Of a stretch of DNA of 64,000 bases, positions 1,872 to 64,000 are shown piece after piece (positions within the stretch are counted from its first letter, which is position 1; each line of letters starts with the position of its first letter). The notes under the pieces were generated by a model, which was given only the letters and a program-made list of their open reading frames with translations, was not told the DNA's origin and searched no databases. The translations under genes and the position numbers were made by a program. Source of the stretch: Macrostomum hystrix (taxonomy: Eukaryota > Animalia > Platyhelminthes); the NCBI GenBank assembly GCA_950097015.1, contig CATNEN010000031.1, forward strand, positions 2,728,001-2,792,000, written 5' to 3'.

Positions 1872-3227
1872 ATGTTACTGCCAACCAGCTGTCAGGATAG
1901 AGAGAAAGAGATCAACGACACCGAGAGTCAAAAGTCCGGAAGGAGTCTGCGAAAGGTGAGTCTGATTGCTGAGTCACGTTAAATAATATTTGTGATTATT
2001 GCAGGAGGGCTGCAGGCAACGACACACCATTTGGTGACACTAGACCCGCAGCCAGCGAGGAGGCAATACTGCCCATTTCGCTGACTCCTGAGCACACACG
2101 CACAAGGATACTGTACGCAGGCACACGCTCACACAGGTGTGTACATCTGCCCTGACTTTCTTATCGTCACGCAGTGTACACTTTCACTTGTGTCTTTGAG
2201 GTTGGCTCTCAAGGGCGTCAATTGCACGACAAGCCCCTAAGCCTTCTCTCCGCGGCTGCTTCCCAAATTAAAGTGTCTTCGCCGCGGATTCGAGCTCAGG
2301 GACTTTGGCGCGTCCCTGAACTCAAACTCTCTTAAACGCGTTAACCGCTCTGTCAAACCCCAGTGAGTAATAATGAATCATTTTGAATTGTGTGTTGCGC
2401 ACATTCTGAAAAAAACAATTAAGTAGCAACCTCTACAGAACGTCGAGATATTCAACGATTTTGACATCGTCAAATTTTGAAAAGGCCACATTTTCCCCTA
2501 AGCGCTAAAGGCTTCAGTACACCCCTGTACGCCAATCAGCATCTCAGTACAGTTTTGCAAAGCGTTCAGTTTGTCAATCACATCTACTGCATCATCAGGG
2601 CATTCAAAGTCACTGTAGTGTCCCCTGACCCAGAGGTCCCCTAACGGGCTGTCCCCTCCCCTGATAATAGGCGGAAAAGTAGCTAGTATTCCTACTGTTA
2701 AATTGACATCCAAGAATTGTACAGCAGATTAGCTCCAACAATTCTCCCTTATTCTTTCTGAATATCGGAAAACCCAGGCCATCCTGACAGCGGGCAGGTC
2801 GGCACTGCTCTGCCTACGCGTTGGCAATTCTTCAATACAGCTATCTGATAACGATCGTCAAGAGCTGGTGGTGGCCCATCGCTACCTGTGGATCTGTGCG
2901 GCGGCCCTTACCCTACTGGTGGTGACAGCCGTCAACCTACTGCCGCGCAAGTTCAACTTTCCCATACACCCGTCTGTCATCCTGCTAACTGTGCCTGCAG
3001 CCGTGTGCATCATCGGCATCGTCACCGGCTGCTGCCTGCACGCCAGAGTCTATCAAAGGAACTGTCGCAGAGAGAGCGGCAACTACGGCTTTTACTGCTG
3101 CTGCGGTGGCGGCGGCGTCGGGGGCGGATTAGCAAGAGGACCGGACCAAGACGGCTACCTGCTGCAGCCGATGAATCGGAATAGCGCGGTGCCGCGCGAC
3201 ACACAGGAAAGTCTGGCCGATGTCTGA
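1872..3227 (+). CDS. Putative 156-aa two-transmembrane protein of unknown family, 2 exons
   Basis: Exon 1 is 1872-1955 (acaacaATG...AAG|GTGAGT, 28 codons, phase 0). Exon 2 is 2841-3227 (ttcttcaatacag|CTA, open to TGA). Two hydrophobic segments (YLWICAAALTLLVVTAVNLL; VILLTVPAAVCIIGIVTGCCL) are followed by a Cys/Gly-rich tail. No homologue recognised. Confidence 0.55.
1995..2361 (-). mobile_element. tRNA-derived SINE, family A, copy 1 (intronic)
   Basis: Aligns by eye to 23255-23649 and 37724-38050. The minus strand has a tRNA-like head with a B-box-like GAGCTCGAATCC and an (ATT)-type 3' end. Confidence 0.8.
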
Positions 3228-49654: not shown

Positions 49655-52600
49655 TCAGTCGTCCAGTTGGCAGAGCAGGGCGCAGCCGCGCTTCACCCAG
49701 TGCGACGGCTTCTCGTTGCAATTGAGCAGTATCGGCAGCACGAAGTTGGTGCTGTGACCCGTGGTCGACAGGACACCGCGCCGCTCTGAGGTCTTGTACA
49801 CCGGGCAGGTGTACCTGTTGGACTTCTCGTCAATCTCGTTGCGCTTCATTGGCCGGAGCCAAATTACTGGCACGTGATCGTACAGTATCTTCGGCAGCTG
49901 CTCGCCCAGGCAGTTCCTGTGGATTTTTTGTTAAAATAGAACTTTCCAAAGAGCCACTATGGGAGTAGAAATGGAAACCACGTTTCTTAGAAAATGTTTA
50001 GGAGGCTGGTTTTCACCGAAAAATACACACAGATCCAAAGCTCGTCTTTTGATGTTTTAAATCATGATTCTTGTAAAGTCTACTGGCGAGTAGAAAGTGA
50101 AGAATGTGAAGAATCACGTGATAGTCACTTCGTCCAATAGCGACGACCTTAGAAAAGGAAACTGTTCAGAAACAAGAGACAAACAAAGACTACGTTCTAT
50201 TTAGAAGGTATTCAGTCTGATCTTTGGTTGCTCACCTGTCCCGATCCCACCTGGCGCCGTCCAAGTACAGGCCGATGACGTAGGCGCCATCCTTCGGCGC
50301 GGTTGACATGCTGTCCACAGCCAGCACCTGGAAGTCGAAGCCCAGCAGGTCGATGGGGATGGTGTACTTCCTGGCGTAGTTCTGCGTCACGCCAGTCAGG
50401 AAGGCCTGCGTGAAGAAGAAGCCGGAGATCCAGAACACGGGAGGCTTGTCTTCGTCGTACCATTTCTGCAGGAATTTCAGCCGCTCGAGCAGGTCGTTGA
50501 TGTAGCTGCCCAGCGGCTTCAGGCTGGGATAGGAGTTGCGCATCCAGAGTGCCGGCACCCTGCCCACCGCCAGGCTGCCACCGAGGGCCTCGAGATCCGC
50601 GTTCATCACCACCAGGCCCTTGATGGCCTTCTCCAGCGACTGCAGCGAGGAGCGGACGGTGCCGACCAGCTTGTTGAAGCGCTCCATCTCCTGGGTGAGC
50701 ACGGTGTTCATGCTCTCAGTGTAGACAACCGGGAACTTCCGGATGGCGGCCTCGAGGTCGAAATTCTTTGGCAGCTTCTTCAGAATGTCGCTGGCGATCT
50801 CGTTCAGGTAGGAGTCGCTCTGGCCGGACTTGCTGGTGCCGGCCTGGCCCAGGGTCAGCAGCACGGAGTCGAACAGGCCGCGAGTGTCCTGCAGCTCCCG
50901 GCTGATGTCCACGTTTTCGTGCATGCCGAACACCTCCGGGTGCTGGTAGGCCGGCAGCTTCTTGATGAACTCCAAATAGTCGGCGTACTCCATCTTGTTG
51001 GGGATGTAGTAGGCGCCGGACGGGCTCAGCTTGAACTTCTGCTCGGTGACAACGCCGGGATTATAGAAGTCAGCCAGGATGGTCATGAGGCAGCGCCTGT
51101 CTCTGTCGTCGGTGACTCGGCCGCCGTAGTTACACTCGCCAGTCAGGTAGGTGATGGCGTCGTACGGCACCTGCTCGTACTCGTTCACGAACATGCGCAG
51201 CTGGCGCACCGAGATGCTTAAGTCGGAGTCGTTGAAGCCGTAGGGGATGTTCCAGCCCATCGGGCCGAACTTGCGTCGCTCCTGCACCAGGGCGTGGAAG
51301 AAGCACAGGCTGTAGAGCAGCTTCTCGAATGTGGCCTCCTTGCCTGGGCAGCCGTTGAAGAAGGACGGATCCGAGATGGGATCATTCAGGTAGGACTGCA
51401 GCAGATTCTGGCGCAGGCCGGTGGGCGGCTCGTTGGTCATCTTGACGCCGTTCTGCAGCACCGTCACTGGAAACTTGGCGCTGGGGTAGCTGGTCAGCCA
51501 CAAGCGGAAGTCCTGGTGCGTGGTCTCCTTGGCCAGCCACTCCTCACAGATCTTCTCCAGCTCGCCCATCCAGCTAACGGCCAGGTGGCAGTTCTGCAGC
51601 ATAATCCAGCTGCCGTCCTCCATGGCCTTCTCGATCTTCCTGGCCGCGATGGGTCCCTGGCCCTGGCCCAGCGAGATCGAGTCGAACTTGTTCCCGCTGA
51701 AGCCCATGTCGTCGACAAACTTCAGCAAGGCCATGGTCGGGTCGGCACCCGGCGACAGCACAAAGATCAGCGGCACATCGCGGCGCGAGTCCTGATAGGA
51801 GCGGCTCAGATCAAACGGTGGCGGCTCCACAAACTTCGGGCCGAGCTTCTCCTTGACGTACTGTGTCACCATCGGGATGATCTTGTCCGGCCGGATGCAG
51901 CGGACCACAATGATCCGCTTGAACTCGTCCAGTTTCGTCTGCCAAGGGTCCGGCAGCGGGGCCTCGTGCGGATCCTTGCTCTCGTAGAACTGCTTCCAGT
52001 CCGAGATGTGGTCGCAGAAGTGCTGCCTGCATTTTTGAGGGGGCATTGTCAAGCGCCGGTAGTCTATTGGTCAGTCGAAAGACATTTTTCCCACGTCAGT
52101 CTCCTATTCTGAAGGCCATTTTGAACCAATATCCGATTCTGGAGATTGTCCCGCACCAATGTGCAATTCTGGATATTGTCCCGCACCAATGTCCAATTCT
52201 GGAGGTTGTCCTGCAATGGGGATCAAATAGACCGCAGCAGCGCATCTCACCTGAAGCCCTTAAACGCTGAAAGGTCGGACAGGCGGCAGATCTCGTCCCA
52301 GCTCTTGTCGGACAGCCATGACGGGTCCGGGTTGGCGAGCTTGTTCTCCAGGCCCACGCCGCCAGTCAGGAGGAACAGCAGCTCGGTTTCGTCCAATTCT
52401 CCGCGAGCGCTAAAATCGTGATCCGATTTTTTTAAATTGGTGCTTAAATTGTTTGTTTTAGTGTGCAGATAAATTCAAATTTCTAATAGCACGACATTTA
52501 AAATCGTGATAGAACTGCACTATTTCAATTGAACTTATTGAATTTGGTGAATAACATCAACAAATCTACATAGTATTTGTTTTTAAAACATATAACAACA

Positions 52601-55600
52601 ATAAGATACGAGTGGTAAAGGAAGTTAAGGAAACAGAAGTTAGAAAATATTCAAAGTATGCATTTTAGAGCAGATCTCACAGTTTAGCGTTATAGTGGCA
52701 AGTTGGATACGTGTGGCAGGGACAGTGGCTGAAGCAGTTAAAGTGCAGATATAGATATAGCACTAAGACAAAGTTACTCCAGACATCATAGAAGGCCGAA
52801 CCCATTTCTGTACATACCAGAGGCTCAGGGATTACTTGAATAGGAATCGCGCAACACTCCAACTTATAGAAAATGTATTCAATGTTTCATTGGCTGAGAT
52901 CGGTCACGTGACTGAGTTTAATGGGGTGTCTAAAAGGAACTCCCCGAAGCGTTAGCTAAATTTAGAAACAATTCAATCCTTCCTCGACCAATTAAAACTT
53001 TTCACTAAATTTGGAGTGCTGCGCTCTCTGTAATTCCAGTAGTCCTTGGCGAGGAACTATTCGACAGCAGATCGAAATGGCTGAGTGAGTAGCCATCTCA
53101 GAGAACTTACGACATGAGCTGGGTTGTCATTAGAAAGGAGAAAAGCAGTTTGTCTTTGGCAAACAGCGACCGACAAACGTTGGTGTAGAGCGATATGGTG
53201 AAGTGCTCGATCAGGTAGCGAATGCGTTTGTCCAAAATGCGGCTCTTGTTGCTAAAATCCGGCGTCATTGCAGCAGGGAAACAACAGGCGGCGAATGATT
53301 AGCGAGCGAAATCTACTACTGACTACTAACAGTAATATTAGTAGGTTTTTAATCAATATATTCAATCAAAGTTAATAGCTAAAAATTCGCACGATTGGTT
53401 AATTATTTGTAAGGCAGTGTTAGTTGCTAGCCAATTTATGTTGAGCATTATTTCGCAGGCGAAAATCGCAACTTCCAATGCTTTCCGAGCTACTTTGATT
53501 CTTCCTACAATGACTGCCAACTCACATCACCAGATTTGTACAGAGTTTGAATGAGAACAGCAGCTTGTCCTTGGCGAACAAGGAGCGGCAGACATTTTCG
53601 TACAGGTTGTACTGAAAATGATCCTTCAGGTATCGAATTCGCCGGTCCAGAATCTTTGACTTGTTGCTGGAATAATTTCGCCAATCAACATCAACACCGA
53701 TTAGTGCTTTGAGCACACTGATTGACATGTGAGTTCATTCATGCTGCTCATACTCAGGCACACATTAGCTTCTTGTGAGCTTATATAAAATGTGACTTGA
53801 TTAGTTCCATTAACAGTAGGACTACCAAGCCATTTTGCCGCCCGTTTTTATACCAAGGGGGATTTTTCCAATTTGACAATTTTTTTGGCAGCGCCCGAAT
53901 GCTAATAGCGTTGGGTGGTGACTGATTGGTTGACAGACTAGGCGATGGTGTCCTGTGGTTGAGCTGCGCCAAATATTTTTTGGCTTGAGCATTGAAATTT
54001 GAGAAATTCGCGTCAGGGTGTCCATAGTAGCTTAGTTCCACCTGTTGTAGCCCTTGAAGGTCCAGCAGTCTGTCTAGATAAAGGTAGGTGACCACCGAAG
54101 ACGGAGATGATGCAGGCACACTCGGGTGACATGCTGACAAATTTTGAAGGCCTGGCAAGGCCGCACTGAACTGCAGTGCAAATTCGTGTATAGGGGTGTA
54201 TGAAATACACTAGCTCTTATGGGAAAAATCGGACCTTCGGCCAGAAACATTGAATATCTCGACGGCCTGAAGAGCTGGCAACTTTTTTCTTGTTTCAGAA
54301 GATGCGCAACAAAAAGTTGGCCCGTGTTCTTGAGTTTCGTGTGCTTGCATTGTTCCGTTCGGGTGCAGCAAAAAAAATTGTACAGTACAGTAGAACAAAA
54401 CAACTGTAAAATGGGGGTAAAAAACAGTAGAACTACCAAGGGGGGAATTCCCCCCTGACAATTTTTTTGCTGCACCCGAAAGGAACAATGCAAGCACACG
54501 AAACTCAAGAACCAGGGCCAACTTTTTGCTGCACCTTGTTACACCTTGGTATAAAAACGGGCGGCAAAATGGCTTGGTGGTCCTACTGTTAAAGTGGTCT
54601 CAAGTTGGTCTCACTCCATTAAGGCCGTACTCGTCCTTTATAGTCTAAGTCAGCAGTCTCATCTTATTCTCATAGCGATTTTGTGTTTTGAGTTATCAAG
54701 TGCCTGCATTATATATTATAGTTTAACTTGTGACCATTTTTAAGTGAGTCAAACAATACGAGTGAAAAAAAACTTTTGTCAAATTAATCAAATTTTCCTA
54801 TAAAATTACTGTATTAATAAGGCAAAATTCTGGGCATGGTATTGGAGATGCACCGCGAAATTAAGAATGCTTCAATGTTATGATATTTAATAATTATAAT
54901 TACAAGTTACTAATGCGTGTCTTGGGGTGGGCAATCAGCAAGGAGTGAGGTTGGTGGCCTATGGGGTAGGAAGCGAATTATCTCCAGCCAATGGGGAACA
55001 TGGAAAGCAAATGAGCTTCTTATCGGACCCATATCTAGCCAATAGAATTTTCTGGGAGTGAGGTGGTTGTCCAGTGGAAAAGGCCTTGAAAAAGTTTTAC
55101 GTCAACGCTGTTGCACGTCACTCACCTGTCATTGATGGAGTTAATGTAGAGATTGACAAACCAAGTCAGCGAGTACTGATACATCGGATCAATGTTAGGC
55201 AAGTCGGTGATGGAGAAGAACAGGATCGATGAGTGATTGGCGATCGGCGCATAGTCCATGCGAGCGGCGTCGATCTTCTCCTGGGTTTTCTCGGCCACCT
55301 GTGGCCCAGTGATTGGCAGCGCTTGTTCTTAATTTGCTTGTCTACTATCGTATCAGAAGAAATGCTTAGAATTTGTCCTCATACTTACCTTCTGCTTCTT
55401 CTGAATGTCATCGGATAGAATCTTTGAGGAGTCCAAGATCTGGATAGCGCTCTCATTCTCCAGGATGTTGCCCTCAGACTCTGCCAGCGTGGCCAGGATC
55501 TTGTCTTCGATTTCCTTCAGCTGCTTGCGGTTCTGCGCTGTCATCTTGATCAGCGACTGGCGCTCCTCTTCCAGGTCGGGCCTGAAGAGTGCGAGTGAAG

Positions 55601-58600
55601 CTTGGAAGAAATTTACGCCACGAAAATAGTTACAAATGTTGTCATCCCTACTTACAGTAAGCCAGTAAGCTAGTGAAGCTGAAATTATAAAATTAAAGAT
55701 TTGCATTTTCAAGAGCAAGGACACTCACTTCTCCTTGGCAACCACGATGCCGAGCAGCTGATCCTCCAAGCCCTCAGGAGTGATCATGAAGTTGAGCAGA
55801 GACACCTTCACGGCAATCTCAGGTAGGTAGTGCGGATTCCTCAGCTTGGTGGTGATGAAGAATTTAAAGTCCTTCGAATACTCGATGGTTGTCTCGCCGA
55901 GACGAATCATGTCAACTCCGCCTGTTGGTGCATCGTACACAATGAGGTCATTGACAGAATGGGTATTTTTTTAGAAAACAATAATGAAATTGTTTAAAAT
56001 TGGCCATTAAGTGTGAAAAAAAATAAAACTTTTTGAAAAAAGCTGGTGCAACTCGAAGTTTAATCTGTGATTGTGAAAATGAGAAGTATAAATGTTTTTT
56101 TAGCGAAGGAAATGGATTTAACTATTTTCTGTGATTTTGTCCCAGCAGCATTCGTTGATGGACTCCTTTTAATCATGCCCCTCAAGCTTCATACAGGTAG
56201 GCCTTTTGTTTATCTGGAAGAAAGTCGTAAGTTTCAAGCCGTTGCGAGCACGTGAGACGCTCATGCCCCAAATGCAACCGAGCAAATTTGAGTAGACATC
56301 CTGCCAAGCAGTTGCTGAACTCATGCGGCTGCTCACAACTGTACTCACTGGAGCCCGTCAGACTGGAGGCCGACGCCGAGATGTCGTATCGGCTGCTGCT
56401 AGCTCGAGATTCATCTAATTCGCACAAACAATGCGATTCAAGGTTTCGGACATCGAGTTTGTTGAAATCCCAAATTATCCCTGTTCTAAATTTCACTCAT
56501 GTTATCAGTGATCATGGAGTGTACTCACTATTTCGGATAAAACTAATGTTATATGGCTCAGACAAAGAACAAACCGAACTGATGTGACGAAAATTGCACG
56601 AAAACTATTTAATTTGAGCAGTCTTACTCTGTCCTCTTGCTGAAATGATAGATTTTTTTCAGAATCAGTTTTATTGATTTGTTATTGATCTACTTGTAAT
56701 CTACGATCTTAAGAAAACTTTTGGTGCTTTTGGGTGGCGGCCTCCTCAGTCCATGGACTGAACAAGTGGTACACAGGCTTTGGAAGCCACTGGCTATGCA
56801 TTTGGCCCAACTGGGCCAGTTGAAATTTCTACCTATTTTTTTGTATTGCTTCTGTGTAGCCTCTGCGATCAAACTCACTCTGCTTGAAGGTCTGCTTGAG
56901 CAGCACCGGCTCCAGGCTGGGGTCCAGCTCCTCGCCGACATTCTCCAGCAGCAGCGGATTGCCGTAGCTGATGGCCATCTCCATCTGGCGCATGTAGTTC
57001 GAGTCGCTCAGCTTGATTACGGCGAAGCCGGGCGTCGATTTGTACGTGTTCTTGACCCACTTGTTCGCCTGGCCTTGCGGATCGATCATCAGCGGCCTGG
57101 AAAGTAAAATTGTCTCCTAACTGTGAGGCTTGGTATCGAGTCAGTGTGGCATCACCATTGTATCATTTGAGACCAACGAAGGCCAATTGTTACACGCCTT
57201 TTCGAGTCTATGGCCACGGCTGGCTATATCTGTCCTGCCATAACTTTGGGCCATAGACATTTGGAGTGTGCAAATGTGTTGTATTGCTCTTGAAACGTCT
57301 ATGGGTCAGAGGCGCCCAAAGTCATACAATGCCAGTGGAGAATGGATATGATTACAGAAACGAGCTTAAATTTCCGAGTGCTTAACTTACCAGCGCCTGG
57401 AGTTGGACACAATGACCGAGTTGTCTATGGAGAAGGCGTCCCTAGGCAGGCCGGCGATGTTCCAGGCTTGGATCTGCACCGGGTCGCCCAGGCAGACGGT
57501 CAGAGAGAAATTCTCTGAACAGGGAATCTTCTTTTCCTTGCACAGCTTCACCCACTCGCTGGTGGTCTGAGCCCGGTAGATCATAGTGAAGGGGCCAAGG
57601 TAGGCGATCACACCAGCAGAGATCAGCACATCGCCGAGTAGGTTATCGTAGATAGCCTGCAGGTTCTTTGCCGCCTGGTCCCAGCGGTCCTTCTCGCCGC
57701 CAAGGCCGCCAATGAGCTTCTTGGCCCTGTCCAGCTTCTTCCCGCATAGGTCGACCTCCAGTTCAAGGCGAGCCTTCTCATTCTGCGCATCCTCCAGCCG
57801 CTGCTTCAGCTGGGACAGCTTGTCCTGCACAGCGCGCAGCTCGCCCTGCTTCTGCGCCAGAATCGCCATGTTGCTCCGCAGCTCGGACTCGGCCTCGGCT
57901 AGCTTCGCCTTCTTCGGCGCCACCACCTTGGCCACTCGATCGTAGACCTCCATGGCCAGGATCCACTTGCACAGGCCTTCTGCCGCGGATGAGGCGCGGG
58001 CCACTTTGCTTGGCTCGAACTCTGGATTCGGTATGTACTCCTTGCGGATTTTGGTCATCACAGCCACTGGGATGTTATCCTTGTCGTACTCCTTCAGGTA
58101 GTTCAGGAAGTTCATGTCGGTAATGAGCTTCTTGGACGGGCCCCAGTAATCCAGAACTTTCTTGGGGCCGCCTGCCGGGTCCTGGACCTTGTCAGGCTGC
58201 ACCTGACGCATCACGCAAACCGCTGCCATGACAATTTTCACACCCTCTGGTGGATTCTGCATCGTCTTCACAATACCGATGTCGCTCGGCTTCAACGTGT
58301 TCAGCGCCTCCAAAGCAGCTTCGAGAGCTGGCAGGGCTTCGGCGAGATCTGCCTCACATTCATCCTTCAGAGCGCGCGAGGAGGCCGCCTTCTCGTTGAC
58401 CATGGCCTCCTCTTTAGTGACTTTGTCTTCCTGCTCAGCAACAACCACAGACTCGTGCTCGATCACCTTCATGAGCTCGATGTTCTCCTGGCTGGCCTGC
58501 ACCAGCTGCGGCTGCAGAGCTTCGAGCTTCTCCTGCATGTCCTTCACTTGTTCGCCGGCGAAGGCCAGCTTGTCCAGACCGTTGACGTAGCGCCGCTTCT

Positions 58601-61600
58601 GCCGCATTGTTTCCTCCTGCTTGGCGTTGATGAGGCCTCGGAAGCTGAGAATAAGCTCCAGGTAAGAGGTGGGTGTTACGTAGGTCTTGCGTCCCATTTC
58701 GTTCAGGAACTTGTCCGACAACAGCCGGATGCTGGTGTGGAAGTGCTGCACGATTTTCACAACATCGGCGCGATGCTCGTCCTCCATCTCCACGTTCTCA
58801 AAGGACTTCATGGCCACGCGCTCAAGAGCATCTGGCGGCCAGGGCTGGAACCAGTCAATTGTGCAACAGTTGATCAGGCTCGGAAACTTGCGTAGCCGGT
58901 TTCTGAATGCGTCGCCAATTGGAGAGAAGGCAATCACAATGTGCAGGTTTTCACGGACGCGGTTCACAAAGAAAGCGTACAGGGCAAGTGGTGAGAAGTC
59001 CGCGTTCTTGTCGCCAGCCTGCGCGAACGGCCGCACCGTTTCCATGATCTCAACCTTCTCGTCATTGGGAAACAGGTTGGGAATTTCGCCAGTGTTCAGC
59101 AGGTTGTCAATGTCTTCTAGGAAGGTCTCCTCTTTGATCTGAGTGTCGGCCATCAGGAAGACGGTCTTCTTTCCCTCGGCGCCAGCTTTCTTCATCATCT
59201 TCTTGACGTCCTCGCGCCACTCTGTCATGCCGTAGTTCTTTGAGATCTCAGGCTGGCATATGATGTAGCCAGCCATGGAAGTGGCCAGGCGGGTCAGCGA
59301 CTGACGACCAGAGCCACCGACGCCGACTAAAAGGGCGTGGCCACCAGGCGTCCTGAGGATGCGGCAGATTCTGGACAGATGCTCCAAAACGTAACGGAAG
59401 ATAACCAAGTGCATTTTGTTCTTCTGGATGTTGTTGTACTCGTCCAGCGCTTGCTCCACAATCGGGTACAAGTCGTCGATGCTCTTTGCTTCCTCATACA
59501 CCCGTTCATCTGGCTCGAGGTCAGGGTTCATAAAGTCACCGAAGATTAGTGACCGTACGTCTTCCTCCGACACCGCACCCTGGCCAGTGCCGCCGCCAGC
59601 CAAGTGTTCAAACACCGATTCGAAACTGTCCTTGAAGTGGTTCTTGACAGAATCCTGCAGCAGCTTGAACAACCACTTCCTGTCCACGTCGTCTGTCAGA
59701 CGATCGTAGAAGACGCGCATGACCTCGTGGCACCAGAGCCGGGTGAAGACGCGCTTCTCTGTCACCTGCTCGCGCTTGATAAGGCAGACGCCTAGGATGA
59801 TGCGGCTAAAGTCGCGCAGGTTGAACACGTAGTGACTCTTGGCTGGCGTCGGCAGCAGATTCTTGATAGCCGCCTTGTAAACCTCCATTGTTGAGTGCAC
59901 AATGGTGCTGCCGATGGCCAGGAAGTCCGAAGTGAAGCCCTGCGTCTTCATGTACGTGTTCATCAGAGCAGTGAAAATGCGAATCATTGTGTCATCGTTG
60001 AAAGGAGTCATGGACACAATATTGAAGTGGCGCATGAAGCGCGGCGTCACGTCGTTGCGGCCGCCACCAGGTGGTCCCATGGCCACGATGAAATAGACAT
60101 CCTGCAAGATAATCTTGGACGTGTCCTTCAGATCGTACCAGTTGCCATGGTCGAAGTACTGACGAAGCAGCTCGATCGGAGGCTGCGCACCGTAAATCTC
60201 CTTCTGCGGCATGTTAATATCGTCAACGAAAACGACAGCCTGCTTGTTGATTGGCGGCCCGAAGACTCCCTTGCGGCGCCTGTCCAGCTTCGACATGATG
60301 ACGTTTTGTGTCTGATTAGCGCTCGTCTGAGCGCTGAAATTCACAAAATGAGGCACAAATTTTTCCTTCGAGAGTTCGTTCATCATTTTGTCCTGCACGT
60401 AGACGGACTTTCCAGTGCCGGTTGGTCCGACGAACATGAGTGGCCGAGACTTTTCAATGCACAGGTCCATGATGAACTTGTAGCGTGCGGTGTCCATGGT
60501 TGGCACCAGGATCTCGCGAATCTTCTTGCCAGCGAAGAGGTCCGCGCCTCGAATCAGATCGTTCCAGTGACGCCACTGGCCACGGGCCTTAGTCTGTAAG
60601 GGAATGCAAGGCAAGGAATTGGCATTTATGGGATTTTAAGAATTTCTGTGAGTTTCTTGCTGAATCTAGTGCATGTGATTTAAAAGAAACTAAAATGCGT
60701 CGCCTCCACTTTACTTTTTCCTTTTCAGAAGTCAGGGTTGTGACATGCCTGTACAGATGGCGTCCGGAACCGTGATAGTCTTGATTCATTGTGATGAAAA
60801 ATTAAATACCAAGAACTGCACGAAAATGAAAGTGCGACACATGACGCGAATCAAAAAACTATTTTTTCAAATTTCTTGCTGCATTCGTTAACTTACGACC
60901 AGATTAAGTCTATTAAACTGCCAATTTGAGAAAACAGTGGTGTAAGATATGTAATTGTTCATTCAGATAAGTCAATGACAAAGCAAAGACTGATCTAAGG
61001 ATTTACCTCGTACATGTAGTCGTAAACCATCCCATTCTCGGGGAACACAGTCTCAATTTTGCCGATCTCCTTGGGCACCGGGTGAGCCTCATTCCTGCCA
61101 ATGACCAAGTCTCGGAAGAACTTGTCGAACTTCTCGCGGCTGTCAACGTCCAAAATGCCACCGATGGACCATGGCACTGCGAACAGCCAGGCGGCTACAA
61201 TCCACGTCTTCAGGTGCTTGTTGTCCTTGGCGTTCTCGGCGTTCACATGCTCGTCCATTAGCATGTCGACGAAGAACATGCAGGACCGAACCAAGTTAGT
61301 CTGGCTGCTGTGGACGTACTCCCGGCAGTTCTTTCTCACAAATTCCAAGCAAGGGTCGATCGCCCACTCCATCAGGTGCGTCATCACCTCCTGGCTTCCA
61401 TCCTTGACTAGCACCTCTGGGAAGTTCTCGATCCACGACTTGACGAGTGGACGCCAGCCGAGGGTGCTGGGCTCGAGATAGATCATGCCGCAGCGGCTGA
61501 CTGTGGCCGGCGACGCCTGCGACAAGTCCATCGTCTCGAAGATCAGGCTCATGACGCGGCTCATCTGAATGATTTCTCCTGACATCAGACAGAGCTTCTT

Positions 61601-63438
61601 GTTGTCATCTGAAATGCGGTTTGAAATTCAAAGTCTACTCAACTGAGGGTTGGTTGAACACATAGACAGCTAATGTAATGCAGATAATAGCAGTTTTTCT
61701 AACCCAGAACTGTATTCATGGACTCGATCCACAGAGTGTCGATGGGTCCATCAAAGATCACCCACTTGCGATCGGGCGTGTCGTTGGACGCGAACTCTCT
61801 GAAAGTGTTCGCCGTAATGCCGTCTGTCCACTCGTGCGACACAGGGTCGAACTGGCCAAACAGCTGGCCCATGGTGATGGCCTTCGGGTTAATGGTTCGG
61901 TACATGACCTTCTCGTACTCGTCCGTGTGTCCGGCTTCGTTCAGATTAGTCATCGTCTCGGCCAGCACGTGCAGCACGCTGGTCTTGCCACCGAAGGGCT
62001 CTCCCACAAGCATAAAGCTAAAAGAGTGAATTTTCAAGTGAGTTTTGGGAAGCTAGAAGATAAAATGCAAGGGTAAAAACGAAAAACGAATGTACTGAAA
62101 GCTCTTCTGAGTAACTCACCCATGTCGCACAATCATCATCTCGTAGGTCTGAATGATCTTCTCCGTAAAGAAGTCAACGCTCTGAAGTTTGCGGGCCTCA
62201 CAAACGCGCCGGATTTCGTCGAGGAAGATCTTGTAGTCTGCCTCGGGCCTCTGAACTCCGGGAAACAGGTCGCTGATAATACCTTCGAACAAGGGGATGT
62301 CATGCGATAGGAACTTCGGCAAGTTGACGTCCAGGATGGAACGAAGCAACAGGATGTTTTCGTCGTCGTCTGGAAACTTCAGCTTCAGATTTCCAGCAGC
62401 TGAGAGCACCGCCTTCACGGCTCGCATTCCGTAGTCGTAGTGGCTCTGGGAACTGAGCAGCTCGGAGCTCAGTCGGTAGGTGGTGACAATCTTCACGGCG
62501 AGATTGCGAGCATCCATGAAACCGAAAGAGTAGAGAGAGATCTCGCCGATCATGGCATAGTCTGGCACCATCATGGCTACTGGCCGGAACAGCACCTTCA
62601 GGTTGTCAGGCAGCTCCGAGCGACCTGCGTATCCGGGATTCATCGTGATGCACACGTAGCAGTTGGGGTTGAGCCGGAGTAGCGTTCCCTCGAAGTCGAA
62701 CTCAACTGCTTTGCCGCGCACAGCGATGATAATGCTGAGGATCTGCTGCGCAACCACAGACAGCACTTCCAGCTCGATGCGGTTGAACTCGTCGAAGCAG
62801 GCCCAGGCACCGCTGGAGGCGAGGCCTTTGAAGAACTTTCCCATGGCGATGTAGTCGAGACCGTCTGAACAGTTGAACACGACGCACTGCACAGCCAGAG
62901 CCTTCGCTAAGTCCTTCGTAGTCTCGGTTTTGCCTGTACCGGCCGGACCCTCGGGGGCGCCGTTCAGGTTTAGGTGGTACGCACCAATCAGGGTGCGATA
63001 GCAGCGATCAGTGAGAGGAGTGATCACAAGCCGCGGCGAGTTGCCCAGGTACTCGTAGGCGTAGCGCACCTTGGCGTTGGTCAACCTGATGAAGACGTTT
63101 TCTTCCTCCCAGTAGTAGCGCATCTGGGCCAGCCAGTTAAAGTCGTTTTCGTCGGACACTCCCTTCTTCACCATGTCCTCAACCACGTCGCGCGAGTGCA
63201 CATCAATAACGACCAGTGCGCCGAGGGTGATGCGCTGCTGTGCGTTCAACTTGCCGCGCACCAGCACGACGATGTCGGCCAGCTGGTCCGACAGTTTCTT
63301 GTAGTAGTCCTTCAGGCCCTGGACGCCTGCGCTCAAGGCGTCGTGCACCTCCGCTGTCCAGTAGATCTGGGAGACGCAGAGAACTACCTGTCCGGGCCAG
63401 TCGCACACCCACTTCTTGCGGGCCTCAATGGCGTAGGC
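49655..63438 (-). CDS. DNAH12: Axonemal inner-arm dynein heavy chain, DNAH12-like; 3' portion (AAA1-AAA6, stalk, C-terminal domain), 5' end outside the window
   Basis: Exons 62120-63438, 61704-62017, 61007-61608, 57391-60593, 56879-57096, 55729-55921, 55389-55581, 55126-55298, [53526-53666 or 53111-53251], 52251-52409, 50236-52026 and 49655-49916 are all in phase. P-loops: [33 protein letters not shown]. The DNAH12-type signatures, as recalled, are [43 protein letters not shown] and the end LCQLDD*. Confidence 0.9.
52131..52215. repeat. 30-bp unit x3 in a dynein intron
   Basis: (c/g)aattctgga(g/t)attgtcccgcaccaatgt repeated three times. This is the only tandem array seen in the dynein locus. 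Confidence 0.75.
53111..53251 (-). CDS. DNAH12: Dynein alternative exon B (141 nt), paralogue of exon A
   Basis: ggattttag|C AAC AAG AGC...CTC ATG TC|GTAAGT encodes (S)[46 protein letters not shown](S). It is not in the ORF track. Confidence 0.85.
53526..53666 (-). CDS. DNAH12: Dynein alternative exon A (141 nt)
   Basis: aattattccag|C AAC AAG TCA...CTG GTG AT|GTGAGT encodes (S)[46 protein letters not shown](I). Confidence 0.88.
53814..54588. mobile_element. Non-autonomous TIR element (MITE), 775 bp, TTAA-flanked
   Basis: 45-bp TIRs with one mismatch (cagtaggactaccaagccattttgccgcccgtttttataccaagg and its reverse complement at 54544-54588). TTAA on both sides (53810-53813, 54589-54592). Internal ~70-bp inverted repeat. 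Confidence 0.88.
56730..56815 (+). mobile_element. Diverged 3' fragment of the family B SINE in a dynein intron
   Basis: gggtggcggcctcctcagtccatggactgaaca...gcatttggcccaact aligns to 11287-11380. Confidence 0.55.
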
Positions 63439-64000
63439 CTGTAGGGAAAAATGTCAGGTGGTTCGCAATGCCAGAGATATTTGAAATGGTGAATCATGGC
63501 ATTGCTGGTTTAACAGTACACATAACTATGGCTAGCTCTGACGGAGCTCATTGCAAGGCTAACTCAGGGATCAGGGATAACTTTTAAGGGCGTCATAGCC
63601 TCCGGTCACGTCTCCCGACCTTAGAGTATGAGGGAATAGTGTCTTATTCTGGATCATATTTTATTTTCTCTTTAAAGCACCTAAAATCTAAATATACGAG
63701 TAGTATTGATGTTACATTATAATTAAAGGTAGTTGAACAACAAAAGGAAAATGTGAAGCTTGTTTTTGGATTCAAATCGGGTCATTAAGTTAATAGGTCC
63801 GAAAATATCTATTGTGAAAGGAAATACGGCATTTGGCATAGTGAATCGATGCCCATGGTAATAGAATGTTAATAATTGTACAGGGATCACAAAACTTCGG
63901 GTTGAAAATTTCACACTTATGTCTAATCGAATTCCGGGACTCAGACGACACCAACAAGCACTTATAATATTTCCACAGTCTTTGCCTCGTATTTACATGC

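What the first reader, a model, noticed from the sequence alone, without database searches (positions are those of the whole stretch)
53111..53666. Tandem duplicated, probably mutually exclusive exon pair in the DNAH12-like motor domain
Seen: two exons of identical length (141 nt) and identical phase (2/2), 274 nt apart, each with canonical AG/GT sites and an open frame. Both keep the block [16 protein letters not shown] while differing at many synonymous positions and at specific residues (KDHFQYN vs IEHFTIS; KLCTNLV vs LMTTQLM). Established: same-length, same-phase paralogous neighbours are the signature of mutually exclusive exons. The segment lies just after the buttress coiled coil, between AAA5 and AAA6. 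Inference: one gene encodes two inner-arm motor isoforms that differ in an allosterically important region, possibly for different cilium types (epidermal, protonephridial, sperm). Conserved protein with diverged silent sites argues that both exons are under selection.
Basis: partly seen in the sequence, partly recalled or inferred. Interest (0 to 1): 0.78.

Follow-up and report, generated by a model that had tools for sequence, protein, structure and literature searches.

The report
Ancient alternative exon pair in dynein
A flatworm gene for a cilium motor (DNAH12-type inner-arm dynein) has two interchangeable versions of one 141-base exon, and the same pair occurs in molluscs, a ribbon worm, a lamp shell and tapeworms, where it is annotated as used one at a time.

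Summary
Exon A (53666..53526) and exon B (53251..53111) lie on the minus strand. Both are 141 nt, in the same phase, with AG/GT sites, and they are 274 nt apart. They are 72% identical in protein, and their silent sites are saturated.

The gene is a collinear, intact DNAH12-type axonemal dynein heavy chain. This is its only duplicated segment.

The same exon, with the same length, phase and intron positions, is duplicated in Mercenaria (three copies), Lingula and Taenia. In 17 of 19 same-length isoform pairs the two proteins differ only in this segment. These pairs come from 15 species: 13 molluscs, the ribbon worm Lineus and the tapeworm Spirometra. A clam cDNA contig joins the upstream exon to the first copy and then to the downstream exon, skipping the other copies.

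Exon A is 40/46 identical to the Lineus "alpha" exon and falls in the alpha clade. Exon B resembles tapeworm "beta" exons.

The best reading is therefore an old, selectively kept, mutually exclusive alpha/beta pair in the AAA5 small domain, next to the buttress.

A lineage-specific duplication is not statistically rejected. No selector RNA pairing was found. I found no paper describing this pair. Earlier notes of this scan report other mutually exclusive exon clusters in this genome, but none in this gene.

The parts
49658..63474 (-). Part of the DNAH12-type axonemal dynein heavy chain gene that lies in the window (from about AAA1 to the C-terminus)
   Evidence: tblastn of Lineus DNAH12-like X1 (P0451) gives collinear minus-strand blocks for residues 1139-4002. 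Only residues 3220-3267 hit twice. The best solved relative is human DNAH12, 8j07_g1.
55126..55298 (-). Constitutive upstream exon (end of the buttress return helix, then ...[20 protein letters not shown], ending with 2 bases AG of a split Ser codon)
   Evidence: The donor is GAC AG|GTGAGT. The same split codon and donor position occur in Mercenaria. The start at 55298 is my reading of the AG at 55300-55299 and is not RNA-verified.
53667..55125 (-). Intron 1 (1459 nt), which carries a transposon-like insert
53526..53666 (-). Exon A, 141 nt, the 'alpha'-type alternative exon
   Evidence: It is 40/46 identical to the Lineus alpha exon, including a 29-residue identical run with K14, Q18, E23 and A31. 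It falls in the alpha clade with support 85/90 and 96/92*.
53252..53525 (-). Intron 2 between the two alternative exons (274 nt)
   Evidence: It is too long for steric exclusion. Its GT-AG ends look like those of the constitutive introns.
53111..53251 (-). Exon B, 141 nt, the 'beta'-type (canonical-type) alternative exon
   Evidence: It has beta states T18, S20 and T23, and shares K8, I14, Q44 and M46 with tapeworm and fluke beta exons. It groups with cestode beta at 88/89 but is unresolved.
52410..53110 (-). Intron 3 (701 nt)
52251..52409 (-). Constitutive downstream exon (its first base completes ATC Ile after exon A or TCC Ser after exon B; then [17 protein letters not shown]...)
   Evidence: Mercenaria, Taenia and Lingula have an intron at the homologous position after the alternative exons.

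Best explanation
Exons A and B are two functional, alternative versions of one exon of a DNAH12-type single-headed inner-arm dynein heavy chain. Each mRNA is expected to carry one of them. The result is two motors that differ in 13 of 46 residues, plus the junction codon (Ile or Ser). The segment is a helix-loop-helix of the AAA5 small domain directly after the buttress. That part of the ring moves with AAA6L and pulls the buttress against the stalk, which sets microtubule affinity. The pair is most likely not a Macrostomum invention. A is the counterpart of the 5' 'alpha' exon and B of the 3' 'beta' exon found in molluscs, a brachiopod, a nemertean and tapeworms. On that reading the duplication dates to an early lophotrochozoan ancestor and both copies have been kept since. 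Shown here: the anatomy, purifying selection, homologous duplicated exons with identical boundaries in other phyla, and one-at-a-time use in annotated isoforms and one cDNA of other species. Inferred: one-at-a-time use in Macrostomum, a functional difference between the two motors, and a single ancient origin. How exclusion is enforced is unknown. Double inclusion stays in frame, so nonsense-mediated decay cannot police it. The 274-nt intron is too long for steric hindrance. I found no competing RNA pairing. My guess is regulated splice-site choice by trans-acting factors.
For: Anatomy and selection: the exons are equal in length and phase, with canonical sites like those of the gene's constitutive exons. 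pS is 0.84 (saturated) against dN 0.32, and 30 of the 54 differences are at third codon positions. Both copies keep every near-invariant family residue. The gene is otherwise collinear and intact. Homology of the cluster: Mercenaria has three 141-nt copies between the same split codons. Taenia solium and Lingula each have two separate 141-nt AG|C...|GT exons. Use one at a time elsewhere: 17 of 19 same-length isoform pairs differ only inside this segment. They cover Mercenaria, Mya, Dreissena, Ostrea, Magallana, Mytilus, Mizuhopecten, Pecten, Argopecten, Liolophura, Biomphalaria, Littorina, Lineus and Spirometra. The intron-less Logan contig L001 joins upstream exon, alpha and downstream exon, skipping both beta exons of the Mercenaria locus. 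Orthology: A vs Lineus alpha is 40/46. The alpha clade including A has support 85/90 and 96/92*. The divergent copy lies 5' of the canonical one in every locus or tandem model seen. Location: the segment equals human DNAH12 residues 3179-3224. It lies between Pfam AAA_9 and the D6 P-loop domain. The buttress emerges from AAA5s, and AAA5s/AAA6L pull it relative to the stalk (PMC6600642).
Against: AU tests do not reject A and B being each other's closest relatives (p 0.33 and 0.41), since 46 columns give little power. Both Macrostomum exons have Ala31, an alpha state, which fits a local duplication or an old conversion. Tapeworm first copies and the Schistosoma exon do not join the alpha clade in the larger tree. 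Many gene models string both copies in tandem, and this keeps the frame. These include Echinococcus, Taenia, Schistocephalus, Lingula and several snails. They look like ab initio errors, but I cannot prove that. Inter-intron RNA duplexes are no stronger than in shuffled controls.
Confidence: 0.78

Rival explanations
1. The pair is a functional mutually exclusive pair, but it arose by a duplication within the flatworm or Macrostomum lineage. Its resemblance to the alpha and beta exons of other phyla is convergence.
For: AU tests do not reject A+B as sisters (p 0.33 and 0.41). A is the single most similar sequence to B (33/46). Both share Ala31, Ile10 and Asp7. Extra lineage-specific copies do arise, for example a second beta exon in Mercenaria and Dreissena.
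Against: A shares four derived states (K14, Q18, E23, A31) and a 29-residue identical run with Lineus alpha. B shares K8, I14, T18, S20, Q44 and M46 with neodermatan beta exons. The ML trees separate A from B. The order with the divergent copy 5' is the same in all taxa seen. Silent sites are saturated, so the duplication is old in any case.
Confidence: 0.15
2. Only one of the two exons is used, and the other is an unused relic in the intron.
For: There is no transcript evidence in this species. Opisthorchis has only a beta copy in its 99-kb locus, so one copy can be lost. Exon A has an odd Lys40 and exon B a long branch of 0.53.
Against: With saturated silent divergence, a neutral copy should have lost its frame, splice sites and invariant residues. 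Both exons keep all of them, and aa identity of 33/46 was never reached by random placement of the differences. Only a very recent loss of use would escape this test.
Confidence: 0.05
3. Both exons are included together, giving a motor with a tandem 47-residue repeat in AAA5s.
For: 141 is a multiple of 3, so the frame is kept. More than ten public gene models in flatworms, Lingula and snails contain both copies in tandem.
Against: RefSeq isoforms and the Spirometra isoforms carry one copy each. The clam cDNA carries one. Solved DNAH12 and the DNAH12 models from deuterostomes and cnidarians have a single copy.
Confidence: 0.03
4. The duplication is an assembly artefact.
For: None was found.
Against: The copies are only 60% identical in DNA. 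Homologous pairs exist in independent assemblies of other phyla.
Confidence: 0.005

Closest known systems
DNAH12-like alternative isoforms annotated in RefSeq or GenBank for molluscs, Lineus longissimus and Spirometra (e.g. Mercenaria XP_053377920/21/22; Lineus XP_064633434/35)
   Same: It is the same gene family and the same exon. In the loci checked (Mercenaria, Taenia, Lingula) the exon has the same 141-nt length, split codons and intron positions. There is a divergent 5' copy and a canonical 3' copy, and isoforms of equal length differ only here.
   Different: Venerid and dreissenid clams have three copies. Mollusc alpha exons are much more derived (H33, V36, D23). In Macrostomum the beta-type copy is the more diverged one and carries Ala31. 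These isoforms exist only as database records; I found no paper describing them.
Mutually exclusive exon in the Schistosoma mansoni cytoplasmic dynein heavy chain DHC1 (Pillmann et al. 2011, PMC3228551; noted again in Kollmar 2016, PMC5100056)
   Same: It is a flatworm dynein heavy chain with two equal-length, homologous exons with split codons inside the motor region, predicted to be mutually exclusive.
   Different: That gene is cytoplasmic dynein-1, not an axonemal inner-arm dynein. [quoted passage not shown] That case rests on prediction, and I did not compare the sequences.
Mutually exclusive exon clusters of muscle myosin heavy chain (Drosophila Mhc), cited as a test case in PMC3228551
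   Same: The principle is the same: one motor gene makes kinetically different motors by swapping homologous exons in the motor domain. This is established knowledge; only the citation was checked here.
   Different: It is a different motor superfamily. No functional data exist for the dynein pair.
Dscam1-type docking-site/selector RNA competition, reported by earlier agents of this scan for other Macrostomum genes
   Same: It involves tandem homologous exons in the same genome.
   Different: No inter-intron pairing above shuffled controls was found here, so there is no sign that this mechanism applies.

Membership tests
Mutually exclusive exon cluster (criteria of Pillmann et al. 2011, PMC3228551) | Candidate exons of about the same length | tested here: met
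   Both are 141 nt.
Mutually exclusive exon cluster (criteria of Pillmann et al. 2011, PMC3228551) | Same reading phase and conserved splice sites | tested here: met
   Both have 1 base, 46 codons and 2 bases, with AG|C ... |GT(A/G)AGT sites.
Mutually exclusive exon cluster (criteria of Pillmann et al. 2011, PMC3228551) | [quoted passage not shown] | tested here: met
   They are 33/46 aa identical. Both align without gaps to human DNAH12 3179-3224 and to the homologs collected.
Mutually exclusive exon cluster (criteria of Pillmann et al. 2011, PMC3228551) | Neighbouring exons between the same constitutive exons | tested here: met
   They are 274 nt apart, between the exons ending at 55126 and starting at 52409.
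Mutually exclusive exon cluster (criteria of Pillmann et al. 2011, PMC3228551) | Exactly one of the exons in each mature transcript | not testable with these tools
The feature is met in other species: 17 of 19 isoform pairs and clam cDNA L001.
Mutually exclusive exon cluster, frame-policed subtype | Joint inclusion or joint skipping breaks the frame, so nonsense-mediated decay removes such transcripts | tested here: not met
   141 = 47 x 3, so the frame is kept either way. This is a subtype feature, not a requirement of the family.
Docking-site/selector RNA competition (Dscam1 type) | One intronic site complementary to a site next to each alternative exon, stronger than chance | tested here: inconclusive
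   The best RNAduplex energies were -27.9 and -20.5 kcal/mol. Shuffled controls gave -27.0 +/- 1.3 and -23.3 +/- 3.8. This is a single sequence with no related species to test for conservation.
DNAH12-type (DNAH3/7/12 group) single-headed inner-arm dynein heavy chain | Best similarity to DNAH12 over other dynein heavy chain classes | tested here: met
   The C-terminal 606 aa score 959.6 bits to human DNAH12, against 848 for DNAH7 and 801 for DNAH3. For exon A, DNAH12 is also best.
DNAH12-type (DNAH3/7/12 group) single-headed inner-arm dynein heavy chain | Collinear motor domain: AAA1-AAA4, stalk, AAA5 with buttress, AAA6, C-terminal domain | tested here: met
   Residues 1139-4002 of the Lineus orthologue map collinearly to the window. 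The Pfam domain order was checked on the clam orthologue. The N-terminal tail lies outside the window.
Lophotrochozoan DNAH12 alpha/beta exon pair (defined in this report) | 5' copy groups with alpha exons and 3' copy with beta exons of other phyla | tested here: inconclusive
   A falls in the alpha clade at 85/90 and 96/92*. B groups with cestode beta at 88/89 in one tree and is unresolved in the other. AU tests do not reject A+B together.

The most novel reading that the evidence does not exclude
An alpha/beta exon switch in the AAA5 small domain of the DNAH12-type inner-arm dynein arose once in an early lophotrochozoan. It has been kept for over half a billion years in flatworms, molluscs, nemerteans and brachiopods because the two versions couple the ATPase ring to the buttress and stalk differently. 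One gene would then supply two mechanically distinct motors for different cilia, or for different positions along an axoneme. Other organisms achieve this with separate 'minor dynein' genes.
Probability: 0.3. Interest if true: 0.75.

Novelty: new member of a known kind. Interest (0 to 1): 0.55.

Why it matters
Alternative splicing inside a dynein motor domain is barely documented. The papers I found give one predicted case, in a cytoplasmic dynein.

Here a specific helix-loop-helix next to the buttress exists in two selected versions across at least four phyla. The beta version is almost invariant from cnidarians to vertebrates, while the alpha version evolves more freely.

This gives a natural pair of variants for testing how the AAA5s-buttress-stalk connection tunes an axonemal motor. 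It also suggests that cilia diversity in spiralians may be produced partly by exon choice.

On the practical side, more than ten public gene models in flatworms, Lingula and snails string both exons together. These are probably wrong by 47 residues.

Tried and rejected
- **Same-species transcripts in the protein database.** None appeared. The best hits to the 606-aa C-terminal exon are 69-74% identical, and no Macrostomum model appeared in the region searches.
- **Docking/selector RNA pairing between the three introns.** It was no better than in shuffled controls. A first, finer scan timed out. The short inverted repeats that link introns are at chance level.
- **Steric, U12-type or frame-based exclusion.** All were rejected from the anatomy: a 274-nt intron, GT-AG ends throughout, and an exon length of 3n.
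- **Structure.** An AlphaFold2 model of the Lineus alpha fragment, built from a 45-sequence alignment, had pLDDT under 50 over the first helix of the exon. I took only a rough helix-loop-helix layout from it and ran no fold search.
- **Loci that could not be fetched.** These were Owenia, Ptychodera, Lineus, Spirometra and Mercenaria X2 (no record) and S. mansoni (gene too long).
- **Naive alpha/beta log-odds classifier.** It is dominated by the highly derived mollusc alpha exons and scores Lineus alpha near zero, so I do not lean on it.
- **Big representative-protein search.** I did not run it. Isoforms collapse at 50% identity, so it could not test for the presence or absence of alpha exons.
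- **Joined models.** I built no joined (spliced) Macrostomum protein. All searches were exon by exon by reference, or used natural database proteins.
- **Earlier findings.** Look-ups near this place and by sequence were blank.

Full report
**Observation.**
On the minus strand, exon A (53666..53526) and exon B (53251..53111) are each 141 nt. Each starts with one base that completes an AG|C serine codon begun in the exon ending at 55126. Each then holds 46 codons and ends with two bases that are completed by the first base of the exon starting at 52409. Both have AG acceptors and GTGAGT or GTAAGT donors, and they are 274 nt apart. Identity is 85/141 nt and 33/46 residues. 23 codons differ only silently and 13 change the residue. 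The splice sites look like those of the other introns of the gene. Because 141 = 47 x 3, including both exons or neither would keep the frame.

**More than chance, and under selection.**
By the Nei-Gojobori method, pS is 0.84 (beyond saturation) and dN is 0.32. 30 of the 54 coding differences are at third positions. In the 16-residue identical block, 12 of 48 bases differ. Placing 54 differences at random gives a mean of 15/46 identical residues, never reached 33 in 100,000 trials, and left no stop codon only 14% of the time. Both copies keep every near-invariant residue of the family. The copies are too diverged to be an assembly artefact.

**The gene.**
The 606-residue C-terminal exon matches human DNAH12 best: 959.6 bits, against 848 for DNAH7 and 801 for DNAH3. 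Residues 1139-4002 of a full-length orthologue map collinearly to window 63474..49658, and only the segment encoded by A and B is hit twice. The exon equals human DNAH12 residues 3179-3224. On a clam orthologue the segment lies between Pfam AAA_9 and the D6 P-loop domain. The preceding exons encode the buttress coiled coil, identified by me from its sequence pattern. [quoted passage not shown] A low-confidence model suggests that the exon encodes a helix (about positions 3-24), the invariant V-C-R-S-L-F loop, and a second helix (about position 31 onward). That the genome is a Macrostomum flatworm comes from earlier notes of this scan. I did not verify it independently.

**The same exon is duplicated elsewhere.**
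- A search with the C-terminal exon led to a Logan protein whose 90% cluster holds three Mercenaria mercenaria RefSeq isoforms of 4016 residues. They differ only at residues 3234-3277.
- The Mercenaria locus has three 141-nt exons at 69027-69167, 71606-71746 and 71850-71990. They lie between the same split codons as in the window.
- A region search then brought up gene models with two copies exactly 47 residues apart. These are in Sinanodonta, Plakobranchus, Biomphalaria, Lingula, Pomacea, Nucella, Schistocephalus and Taenia, and later in Echinococcus and Hydatigera.
- In the Taenia solium and Lingula loci these are separate 141-nt exons with AG|C...|GT ends.
- Nematostella has a single copy in its 32-kb locus and lacks the 3' intron.
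- Opisthorchis has only one copy in 99 kb.

**One at a time in other species.**
I examined 19 isoform pairs of equal length. 17 differ only inside this segment; the other two have 1 and 7 differences elsewhere. The pairs come from Mercenaria, Mya, Dreissena, Ostrea, Magallana, Mytilus, Mizuhopecten, Pecten, Argopecten, the chiton Liolophura, Biomphalaria, Littorina, the nemertean Lineus and the tapeworm Spirometra. The Logan contig L001 aligns to 13 successive Mercenaria exons at 82-92% identity. It joins the upstream exon to the first copy and then directly to the downstream exon, skipping both other copies. That makes it a spliced cDNA carrying one version. The starfish and acorn-worm isoforms, and all vertebrate, tunicate, amphioxus, cnidarian and arthropod models seen, carry only the canonical type. 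Among the 371 segments scored, all alpha-like ones are lophotrochozoan.

**Two types.**
- The 3' copy ("beta", [23 protein letters not shown]) is nearly invariant from cnidarians to vertebrates.
- The 5' copy ("alpha") differs mainly at positions 14, 18, 20, 23, 26, 31, 33, 36 and 43-46. These positions sit on both sides of the invariant loop.
- Exon A is 40/46 identical to the Lineus alpha exon. This includes a 29-residue identical run containing K14, Q18, E23 and A31.
- Exon B has T18, S20 and T23, and shares K8, I14, Q44 and M46 with tapeworm and fluke beta exons.
- ML trees put A in a clade of alpha exons, with support 85/90 and then 96/92* for 17 exons. One tree puts B with cestode beta at 88/89.

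**Limits on the two-type reading.**
With 46 columns the AU test does not reject A and B as sisters (p 0.33 and 0.41). Tapeworm first copies and the Schistosoma exon form their own group. Both Macrostomum exons carry Ala31. I therefore hold a single ancient origin as the better-supported reading (about 0.65-0.7), not as shown.

**Mechanism.**
I commit to mutually exclusive use that gives two motors. This rests on selection on both copies and on the behaviour of the homologous cluster elsewhere. How exclusion is enforced is open:
- The frame is kept on double inclusion, so decay cannot police it.
- The intron is too long for steric hindrance.
- All ends are GT-AG.
- Inter-intron RNA duplexes are no stronger than in shuffled controls.

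A functional effect through the AAA5s-buttress-stalk connection is inference from the location alone.

**Literature.**
Pillmann et al. 2011 (PMC3228551) predicted a mutually exclusive exon in the S. mansoni cytoplasmic DHC1. Kollmar 2016 (PMC5100056) states that some DHC genes have alternative splice forms in the motor domain. Four further searches found no description of this DNAH12 exon pair. The library does not cover all journals.

**Not done.**
Exons were searched by reference one at a time, and natural database proteins were used for alignment, trees and the fold.
- The big representative-protein search was not run.

Noticed in passing
window 53810-54592: A 783-bp transposon-like insert sits in the intron upstream of exon A. 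It has 49-nt terminal inverted repeats that are 98% complementary, with TTAA at both ends, and a nested 71-nt hairpin at 54306-54376 / 54462-54532. In the pre-mRNA the arms could pair and loop out most of the intron. The 35-nt core of the terminal repeat has only these two matches, one per arm, in the window.
   Followed up: partly
P0138 (Lingula XP_013387188), P0146 (Taenia solium), P0467/P0471 (Echinococcus), P0141 (Schistocephalus), P0139 (Pomacea), P0140 (Nucella), P0135 (Sinanodonta), P0136 (Plakobranchus), P0137/P0327 (Biomphalaria GenBank): These public gene models contain both alternative exons back to back, 47 residues apart. They are probably annotation errors that add 47 residues. 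The Nucella model is also split exactly after the exon cluster: P0140 ends there and P0001 starts after it.
   Followed up: partly
L002 71606-71746 and 71850-71990; Dreissena isoforms P0144 and P0262: Venerid and dreissenid clams have a third copy, a second beta-type exon, only 103 nt from the other in Mercenaria. The Mercenaria and Dreissena extra copies group together (99/92*). This marks a further duplication that predates the split of the two bivalve lineages.
   Followed up: partly
window 53526-53666 and 53111-53251, exon positions 31 and 40: Both Macrostomum exons have Ala31, which is otherwise an alpha-only state. Exon A has Lys40 where the other copies tabulated have mostly L, I or V and none has Lys. 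Neither is explained.
   Followed up: partly
P0361, P0362, P0369 and other Schistosoma models; L006 (Opisthorchis): All Schistosoma and Trichobilharzia models carry an alpha-like exon (YLKDHFEYNLY...NIV), while opisthorchiid models and the Opisthorchis locus carry only a beta-type exon. Different flukes may have kept different copies. The S. mansoni locus could not be fetched to check.
   Followed up: partly
P0150 (Acipenser sinensis, marked UNVERIFIED_CONTAM): This protein has two nearly identical DNAH3-like copies of the segment 188 residues apart. That looks like an assembly or model duplication and is unrelated to the alpha/beta pair.
   Followed up: no
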